Origin: Gekko japonicus
Lineage: Eukaryota
Direction: 5' to 3'
DNA: 64,000 nt
NCBI RefSeq assembly: GCF_001447785.1
Contig: NW_015169781.1
Coordinates: forward strand, 797,212-861,211
The notes under the pieces are model-generated. The model did no database searches and was not told the origin of the DNA. It saw only the letters and a list, made by a program, of their open reading frames with translations. A program made the position numbers and the translations under genes. This document shows positions 12,398 to 52,296 of this stretch, one piece after another (position 1 is the stretch's first letter; the number at the start of each line of letters is the position of its first letter).

Positions 12398-52296
<39,899 letters not shown>

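What the first reader, a model, noticed from the sequence alone, without database searches (positions are those of the whole stretch)
19952..19954. Single in-frame TGA at a MAM-domain cysteine in an otherwise intact 1197-codon MAMDC4
Seen: exon 6 reads [15 protein letters not shown] (codon 227). The matching ends of the other MAM domains here all carry a Cys ([48 protein letters not shown]), so this is a TGY>TGA change. None of the 23 downstream exons has a stop, frameshift or broken GT/AG. Inference: this could be a very recent loss or null allele of endotubin, or a secreted 226-aa LDLa+MAM1 fragment if NMD is escaped. It could also be bypassed by splicing or recoding, or be a base-call error. 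The context (UGA-GGC) is not the UGA-CUAG readthrough motif.
Basis: partly seen in the sequence, partly recalled or inferred. Interest (0 to 1): 0.8.

Follow-up and report, generated by a model that had tools for sequence, protein, structure and literature searches.

The report
Reference-only stop codon in gecko MAMDC4
The stop codon is really written in this assembly, but four other DNA and RNA data sets carrying one species label read a normal cysteine codon there and splice the exon normally, so it is a quirk of this one reference sequence and not a lost or recoded gene.

Summary
The TGA at 19952-19954 is in the window. It lies in frame in exon 6 (19880-19964) of the MAMDC4 / apical endosomal glycoprotein (endotubin) orthologue. 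It sits where 114 of 115 orthologues, including all six geckos, have the last cysteine of the first MAM domain (EFRNCGPP).

The one reads call was decisive. At 19954 the assembly's A is read as T, giving TGT (Cys), in all four runs laid:
- two ~80x DNA runs;
- one RNA run whose contig covers exon 6 exactly and leaves the genome at both splice sites;
- one raw RNA read.

Both RNA runs otherwise carry the assembly's alleles at 9 of 10 sites where the DNA runs differ, so they are the same lineage as the assembly.

The stop is therefore confined to this reference sequence. It is either a private, probably heterozygous, nonsense allele of the sequenced animal or a consensus error. I could not separate the two, because the assembly's own reads were not identifiable. 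Species-level loss of endotubin, selenocysteine or readthrough recoding, and splicing bypass are not supported.

The neighbouring 1.08-kb tandem duplicate of exons 4+5, noted earlier by this scan, also looks absent from the two DNA runs. That points to a locally unreliable or haplotype-mixed assembly.

The finding is ordinary and of low interest.

The parts
19952..19954 (+). In-frame TGA of the assembly. Position 19954 is A here but T (TGT, Cys) in all four other runs.
   Evidence: sequence and frame. table 3: X1 84/84, X2 80.7/80.7, X3 2.5/2.5, X21 1/1 read T.
19880..19964 (+). Exon 6 of MAMDC4/AEGP: the C-terminal strand of MAM domain 1 (85 nt, phase 0 to phase 1).
   Evidence: AG acceptor and GTAAGG donor. 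Orthologue alignments. X3 RNA contig 17 matches 19877-19964 and departs at both exon ends (table 8).
16213..16386 (+). Exon 3: the N-terminal part of MAM domain 1.
   Evidence: Pfam MAM profile positions 1-39. tblastn.
17785..17910 (+). Exon 4 (MAM1, 126 nt), first copy.
   Evidence: Pfam MAM positions 44-81.
18289..18434 (+). Exon 5 (MAM1, 146 nt), first copy.
18740..18865 (+). Exon 4, second copy, in the tandem duplicate.
   Evidence: X3 RNA contig joins 18860 to 19364 with GT..AG ends (table 5).
19367..19512 (+). Exon 5, second copy, in the tandem duplicate.
   Evidence: X3 contig 15.
21488..21604 (+). Exon 7 (LDL-receptor class A module). It completes the codon begun by base 19964: c+at = His, giving [15 protein letters not shown].
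   Evidence: tblastn to Gekko kuhli [16 protein letters not shown]. X3 contig 17 carries 106 further letters beyond the 19964 donor.
17611..19650 (+). Two tandem copies (962 and 1078 bp) holding exons 4+5. They are 99.4% alike and differ by a 9-bp indel and a 125-bp indel (18846-18970).
   Evidence: In X1 and X2 a single contig runs through with the 125 bp skipped. Its k-mer depth equals that of the unique flank: 81.1 vs 84 in X1, 77.2 vs 80.7 in X2.
12398..52293 (+). The whole MAMDC4/AEGP gene, 29 exons, collinear with the gecko orthologues.
   Evidence: Heteronotia protein residues 1-1200 all matched. The only exon-internal stop is at 19952.

Best explanation
This is the ordinary, working MAMDC4 (apical endosomal glycoprotein, endotubin) gene of a gekkonid. 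Codon 227 encodes the conserved C-terminal cysteine of the first MAM domain. In other animals carrying one shared species label the codon is TGT. There exon 6 is transcribed and spliced to exons 5 and 7 in the usual way. The A that makes TGA is confined to this reference sequence. It is either a private nonsense allele of the sequenced animal or a wrong base in the consensus. I put these at roughly 55:45 within this explanation. If the allele is real, it is most likely heterozygous, with the assembler keeping one of two alleles. On such an allele the early stop in exon 6 of 29 would be expected to trigger nonsense-mediated decay, which is inferred and not shown. No recoding, alternative splicing or gene loss needs to be invoked.
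For: Shown (reads):
- 19954 is T in X1 (84/84) and X2 (80.7/80.7). These are deep DNA runs of two samples from one study.
- It is T in X3 (2.5/2.5), on a 196-nt contig that matches 19877-19964. That contig leaves the genome exactly at the exon 6 acceptor and donor.
- It is T in the one X21 raw RNA read covering it, which has no other difference.
- X3 is cDNA: another of its contigs joins exon 4 to exon 5 across a 503-nt GT..AG intron.
- X3 keeps the assembly's letters at 19289, 19424 and 19921, where X1 and X2 differ.
- X21 keeps the assembly's letters at 19031-19067 (6 sites) and differs at 19359.
- Both RNA runs therefore belong to the assembly's own lineage and still read T at 19954.

Shown by other calls:
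- Cys is found at this site in 114 of 115 orthologues and in all six geckos.
- All other exons are intact and collinear.
- The one other exon 6 difference in X1 and X2 (19921 G>A) is synonymous, GTG to GTA (my reading).

Inferred: the adjacent tandem duplicate is not supported by X1 or X2 depth. That points to haplotype mixing or local misassembly in this stretch.
Against: - The stop could even be homozygous in that animal.
- X3 (depth 2.5) and X21 (one read) are thin.
- Logan contigs drop minority alleles, so a low-frequency A in X1 or X2 would not be seen.
- X1 and X2 differ from it at 1-1.6% of sites.
- That all runs are conspecific with the window rests on 99% or higher identity and on the haplotype sharing of X3 and X21.
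Confidence: 0.9

Rival explanations
1. Sub-case A: a real private nonsense allele. The sequenced animal carries a Cys-to-stop allele of MAMDC4, heterozygous or homozygous, and the assembler wrote that allele.
For: Local differences between individuals are frequent: about 24 sites in 1.5 kb between the assembly and X1/X2, mostly transitions. A private SNP is therefore far more likely per base than a consensus error in a deep assembly. The two copies of the neighbouring duplicate differ about as much as two alleles would (99.4% plus two indels), which fits a heterozygous reference animal.
Against: The A allele is absent from all four other runs. No read of the reference animal was seen.
Confidence: 0.5
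2. Sub-case B: a consensus or base-call error. No animal carries A at 19954.
For: Every independent data set reads T. The stop lies 300 bp from a 1.08-kb tandem duplicate that two 80x genomes do not appear to have, and between that duplicate and a very high-copy SINE. Such a stretch may have been assembled or gap-filled with low stringency. Earlier notes of this scan report several broken conserved genes in this draft assembly. Those notes are unchecked leads only.
Against: Single-base substitution errors are rare in deep assemblies. The other 28 exons show no lesion.
Confidence: 0.4
3. Species-level, very recent pseudogenisation or loss of endotubin or of its first MAM domain. This includes regular in-frame skipping of exons 3-6 (531 nt).
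For: Two lesions, the duplicate and the stop, fall within the MAM1 exons of this assembly. Exons 3-6 together keep the frame (174+126+146+85 = 531 nt).
Against: Both lesions are missing from X1 and X2. X3 RNA contigs contain exons 4-5 and 5-6-7 spliced in the ordinary way and with TGT. The MAM1 exons are as conserved against Gekko kuhli (88-95%) as the rest of the gene (75-98%).
Confidence: 0.03
4. Recoding: the UGA is read as selenocysteine at a cysteine position, or is read through.
For: A TGA at a conserved Cys position is the classic signature of a Sec/Cys pair.
Against: Conspecific DNA and RNA have TGT. All orthologues have Cys, none Sec. No SECIS family match was found in the whole window at gathering score. 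None was found in the 5.7 kb from the last coding exons onward at E<=10.
Confidence: 0.01

Closest known systems
MAMDC4 / apical endosomal glycoprotein (AEGP, endotubin) of vertebrates
   Same: The exon order and domain order match: LDLa, MAM, LDLa, MAM, LDLa, then four more MAM-type domains, a transmembrane segment and a short tail with an FDN motif. The gene is about 85-93% identical per exon to Heteronotia binoei AEGP and about 90% to the Gekko kuhli model. Pfam finds MAM and Ldl_recept_a in the orthologues. In mammals the protein marks the apical endocytic complex of neonatal ileal enterocytes and is needed for their differentiation (PMC5756061, title and abstract only).
   Different: In this one assembly the codon for the last Cys of MAM1 reads TGA, and exons 4+5 are written twice. 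Neither is seen in the other runs.
Reference-specific loss-of-function calls in draft genomes (private heterozygous nonsense alleles, consensus errors, haplotypic false duplications)
   Same: There is a single lesion in an otherwise conserved gene. It is absent from other individuals and from RNA, and it lies next to a duplicate whose copies differ about as much as two alleles.
   Different: Nothing differs in kind. Which sub-type applies was not resolved. (The category itself is from general knowledge of genome assemblies, not from a tool.)
Selenoprotein genes with Sec/Cys orthologue pairs
   Same: A TGA aligned to a conserved Cys.
   Different: There is no SECIS element, no Sec in any orthologue, and conspecifics have TGT. 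It is not a member.

Membership tests
MAMDC4 / AEGP orthologue | Full-length collinear similarity to annotated AEGP proteins of related species | tested here: met
   residues 1-1200 of Heteronotia AEGP are matched by 29 ordered exons; the hits are named apical endosomal glycoprotein in turtles, crocodilians, birds and squamates.
MAMDC4 / AEGP orthologue | Repeated MAM domains interleaved with LDL-receptor class A modules | tested here: met
   exons 3 and 4 hit Pfam MAM, each exon alone scoring below the whole-domain cut-off. MAM in 5 stretches and Ldl_recept_a in 2 in the closest orthologues. LDLa text is seen at 14.7, 21.5 and 32.2 kb.
MAMDC4 / AEGP orthologue | Conserved neighbourhood (PHPT1 upstream, EDF1 downstream, as in human 9q34.3) | tested here: inconclusive
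   Only ORF text that I recognise as PHPT1-like (about 3062, + strand) and EDF1-like (about 62500, - strand). In addition, a Phrynocephalus model fuses a phosphohistidine phosphatase domain to AEGP. No dedicated search was run.
Unitary pseudogene / species-level gene loss | The disabling lesion is present in unrelated individuals of the species | tested here: not met
   four runs from three studies read TGT.
Unitary pseudogene / species-level gene loss | Loss of expression or of normal splicing | tested here: not met
   X3 cDNA contigs join exons 4-5 and 5-6-7. One X21 RNA read lies on exon 6.
Eukaryotic selenoprotein gene | SECIS element in the 3' UTR | tested here: not met
   no SECIS family match at gathering score or at E<=10.
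Eukaryotic selenoprotein gene | TGA conserved, or Sec present, in orthologues | tested here: not met
   Cys in 114 of 115 orthologues. TGT in conspecifics.

The most novel reading that the evidence does not exclude
The sequenced animal carries a naturally occurring dead haplotype of MAMDC4 with two lesions in cis: the frameshifting tandem duplicate of exons 4+5 and the Cys227 stop. That would be an older null allele segregating in the population, and it would show that adult geckos tolerate loss of one, or both, copies of endotubin.
Probability: 0.12. Interest if true: 0.3.

Novelty: not a real feature. Interest (0 to 1): 0.08.

Why it matters
As a claim about biology (loss or recoding of endotubin in a gecko) it does not hold, so it matters little. 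Its practical value is as a caution. In this assembly a single stop in a conserved gene, and the adjacent exon duplicate, are not reproduced by other data sets, so such lesions should not be read as gene loss without read support. If the A allele proves real in the reference animal, it would be one more private loss-of-function variant in a gene that is not known to be dosage-sensitive.

Tried and rejected
- Alternative donor upstream of the stop. The only GT before the TGA in the 3' part of the exon (GAT|GTGGAG at about 19937) is a poor donor. It would also end the exon in phase 0, whereas exon 7 needs phase 1. Rejected.
- Selenocysteine or readthrough. Rejected.
- RNA editing. Rejected, because DNA runs X1 and X2 also read T.
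- Exact look-up of the TGA-terminated ORF product. The exact-sequence look-up in the protein collection was blank for both ORF versions. That proves nothing, because such short intron/exon ORFs are rarely called.
- Pfam on the 24-residue pre-stop piece and on exon 5 alone. No hit, because the pieces are too short.
- Word-indexed protein search with exon-sized queries. Not attempted, because its length filter excludes full-length relatives. I therefore used the representatives search first (query exon 3). I then ran the word search with full-length orthologues.
- Joined spliced model. It was never built for, or sent to, any search tool. All searches were exon by exon by reference, or orthologue protein against the window.
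- The 34-N run at 23857-23890 was left untouched.

Full report
**Observation.** The window reads ...GAG TTC AGA AAT TGA GGC CCC CCA C|GTAAGG, with the TGA at 19952-19954.
- The exon begins after a ...TTGCAG acceptor at 19880 in phase 0. It ends at 19964, so it is 85 nt long and ends in phase 1.
- The pieces translate to [24 protein letters not shown] and GPP.
- Base 19964 joins exon 7 (21488-21604). This gives His and then [11 protein letters not shown]..., an LDL-receptor class A module.
- So the stop is there and in frame, and ordinary splice-site choice cannot avoid it. The only upstream GT in the 3' part of the exon is a poor donor and would leave the wrong phase.

**Identity of the gene.** I searched exon by exon by reference. 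The joined spliced model was never built for, or sent to, a search tool.
- Exons 3 and 4 hit the Pfam MAM profile at positions 1-39 and 44-81.
- A representatives search with exon 3 returned MAM/LDLa proteins.
- Word searches with two of their full-length members named the family. It is apical endosomal glycoprotein (AEGP, that is MAMDC4 or endotubin), found in turtles, crocodilians, birds, caecilians and many squamates.
- tblastn of these proteins against the window lays out 29 collinear exons from 12398 to 52293.
- These exons cover residues 1-1200 of the Heteronotia binoei protein.
- Per-exon identity is about 85-93% to Heteronotia over most exons and lower in a few. It averages about 90% to the Gekko kuhli model and about 80% to Eublepharis, Paroedura, Sphaerodactylus and Euleptes.
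- The animal is therefore a gekkonid. Earlier notes of this scan call it the Japanese gecko draft assembly. I did not test that.

**The residue at the stop.** In 114 of 115 orthologues whose first MAM domain aligns across the stop, the residue opposite it is Cys.
- All six gecko proteins read EFRNCGPP where the window reads EFRN*GPP.
- The other MAM domains of this gene end in the same DD...C motif.
- In the best Pfam match of the Heteronotia protein, the equivalent Cys lies at the last-but-one position of the 158-position MAM profile.
- 'Otherwise intact' holds for exons 7-29, with no other stop inside any exon alignment.
- It does not hold for the whole gene. Exons 4 (126 nt) and 5 (146 nt) are written twice in tandem at 17611-18572 and 18573-19650. 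Including both copies would shift the frame.

**Reads.** One run search and one laying of reads (window 18716-20355, 1640 letters) were allowed. I laid these four runs:
- X1 and X2: DNA contigs at k-mer depth about 80, from two samples of one study.
- X3: contigs of a small run guessed to be RNA, from another study.
- X21: raw RNA-seq reads from a third study.

All four carry one species label. At 19954 the assembly's A is read as T in every one: X1 84 of 84, X2 80.7 of 80.7, X3 2.5 of 2.5, X21 1 of 1. That restores TGT, the cysteine codon.

*X3 is cDNA.*
- One contig joins 18860 to 19364 across a GT..AG intron, which is exon 4 to exon 5.
- The contig bearing T at 19954 matches 19877-19964 only. 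That is exon 6 plus the CAG shared with the end of exon 5.
- The same contig has 106 further letters beyond the donor, which fits inside the 117-nt exon 7.
- Exon 6 is therefore transcribed, spliced at the predicted sites and carries TGT.

*Are the runs the same species as the window?*
- X1 and X2 differ from the assembly at about 24 sites in 1.5 kb of non-repeat sequence, mostly transitions. Both always carry the same alternative letter, so they are other animals and probably another population.
- X3 keeps the assembly's letters at 19289, 19424 and 19921, where X1 and X2 differ.
- X21 keeps them at six sites between 19031 and 19067.
- The two RNA data sets therefore belong to the assembly's own lineage and still read T at 19954.
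- The only other exon 6 difference in X1 and X2, 19921 G>A, is synonymous.

**What follows.** The stop is not the state of the species.
- Species-level loss of endotubin, regular skipping of the MAM1 exons, and recoding are not supported.
- For recoding, there is also no SECIS family match in the whole window at Rfam gathering scores. There is none in the 5.7 kb from the last coding exons onward at E<=10. No orthologue has selenocysteine.
- RNA editing is excluded, because the DNA runs also read T.

**What the A is remains open between two ordinary cases.**
- *A private nonsense allele of the sequenced animal.* It would probably be heterozygous. It is favoured a priori because differences between individuals are frequent here. 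The two copies of the neighbouring duplicate also differ about as much as two alleles would (99.4% identity plus a 9-bp and a 125-bp indel), which fits a heterozygous reference animal.
- *A consensus error.* It is favoured by the local context. In X1 and X2 one contig runs through the duplicated unit into the unique downstream flank. The 125 bp at 18846-18970 is skipped in that contig.
- The contig's k-mer depth equals that of the unique flank: 81.1 against 84 in X1, and 77.2 against 80.7 in X2. Those genomes therefore seem to hold one copy.
- The duplicate in this assembly then looks like two haplotypes laid in tandem, which is a sign of local assembly trouble 300 bp from the stop.
- I put the split at about 55:45 for allele against error and cannot do better. 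None of the runs could be shown to be the assembled animal.
The exact-sequence look-up was blank.

**Comparison with what is known.** The gene is a plain member of the MAMDC4/AEGP family. In mammals the protein marks the apical endocytic compartment of neonatal ileal enterocytes and is required for their differentiation (PMC5756061, found; title and abstract only). Reference-only nonsense bases and haplotypic false duplicates are familiar features of draft vertebrate assemblies (general knowledge).

**Verdict.** Nothing here is novel, and interest is low. The decisive test is to pile up the assembly's own reads at 19954 and across 17.6-19.7 kb.

Noticed in passing
window 17611-19650: Tandem duplicate of MAMDC4 exons 4+5. 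The copies are 962 and 1078 bp, 99.4% alike, and differ by a 9-bp and a 125-bp indel. Two ~80x DNA runs show one contig through the unit, with the 125 bp (18846-18970) skipped and the same k-mer depth as the unique flank. The duplicate is therefore probably two haplotypes laid in tandem in this assembly and not a real 'frameshift switch'.
   Followed up: partly
window 15233-15352 (-) and 56818-56930 (+): Two 5S-rRNA-like elements score above Rfam's gathering score (48 and 43 bits), one in a MAMDC4 intron and one downstream of the gene. The surrounding ORF text is shared between the two copies, which suggests a 5S-derived SINE family and not 5S genes.
   Followed up: no
window 20200-20545: A very high-copy SINE. 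Summed k-mer depth reaches 6.5e7 in the DNA runs, and there are thousands of reads in the RNA run. A 95-bp unit is repeated twice in tandem at 20356-20545.
   Followed up: no
window 19424: A nonsynonymous polymorphism in exon 5. The assembly and X3 read ATC (Ile). X1 and X2 read ACC (Thr), which is the residue in Heteronotia and Gekko kuhli.
   Followed up: partly
window 18716-20355 as a whole: X1 and X2 share every one of about 24 differences from the assembly (1-1.6%), while X3 and X21 mostly share the assembly's letters. This suggests two well-separated lineages under one species label.
   Followed up: no
window ~3062-3304 (+) and ~62332-62502 (-): ORF text that looks like exon 1 of PHPT1 upstream of MAMDC4 and exon 1 of EDF1 downstream on the other strand. 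That is the same neighbourhood as human 9q34.3. It was recognised from memory, not searched.
   Followed up: no
   Followed up: no
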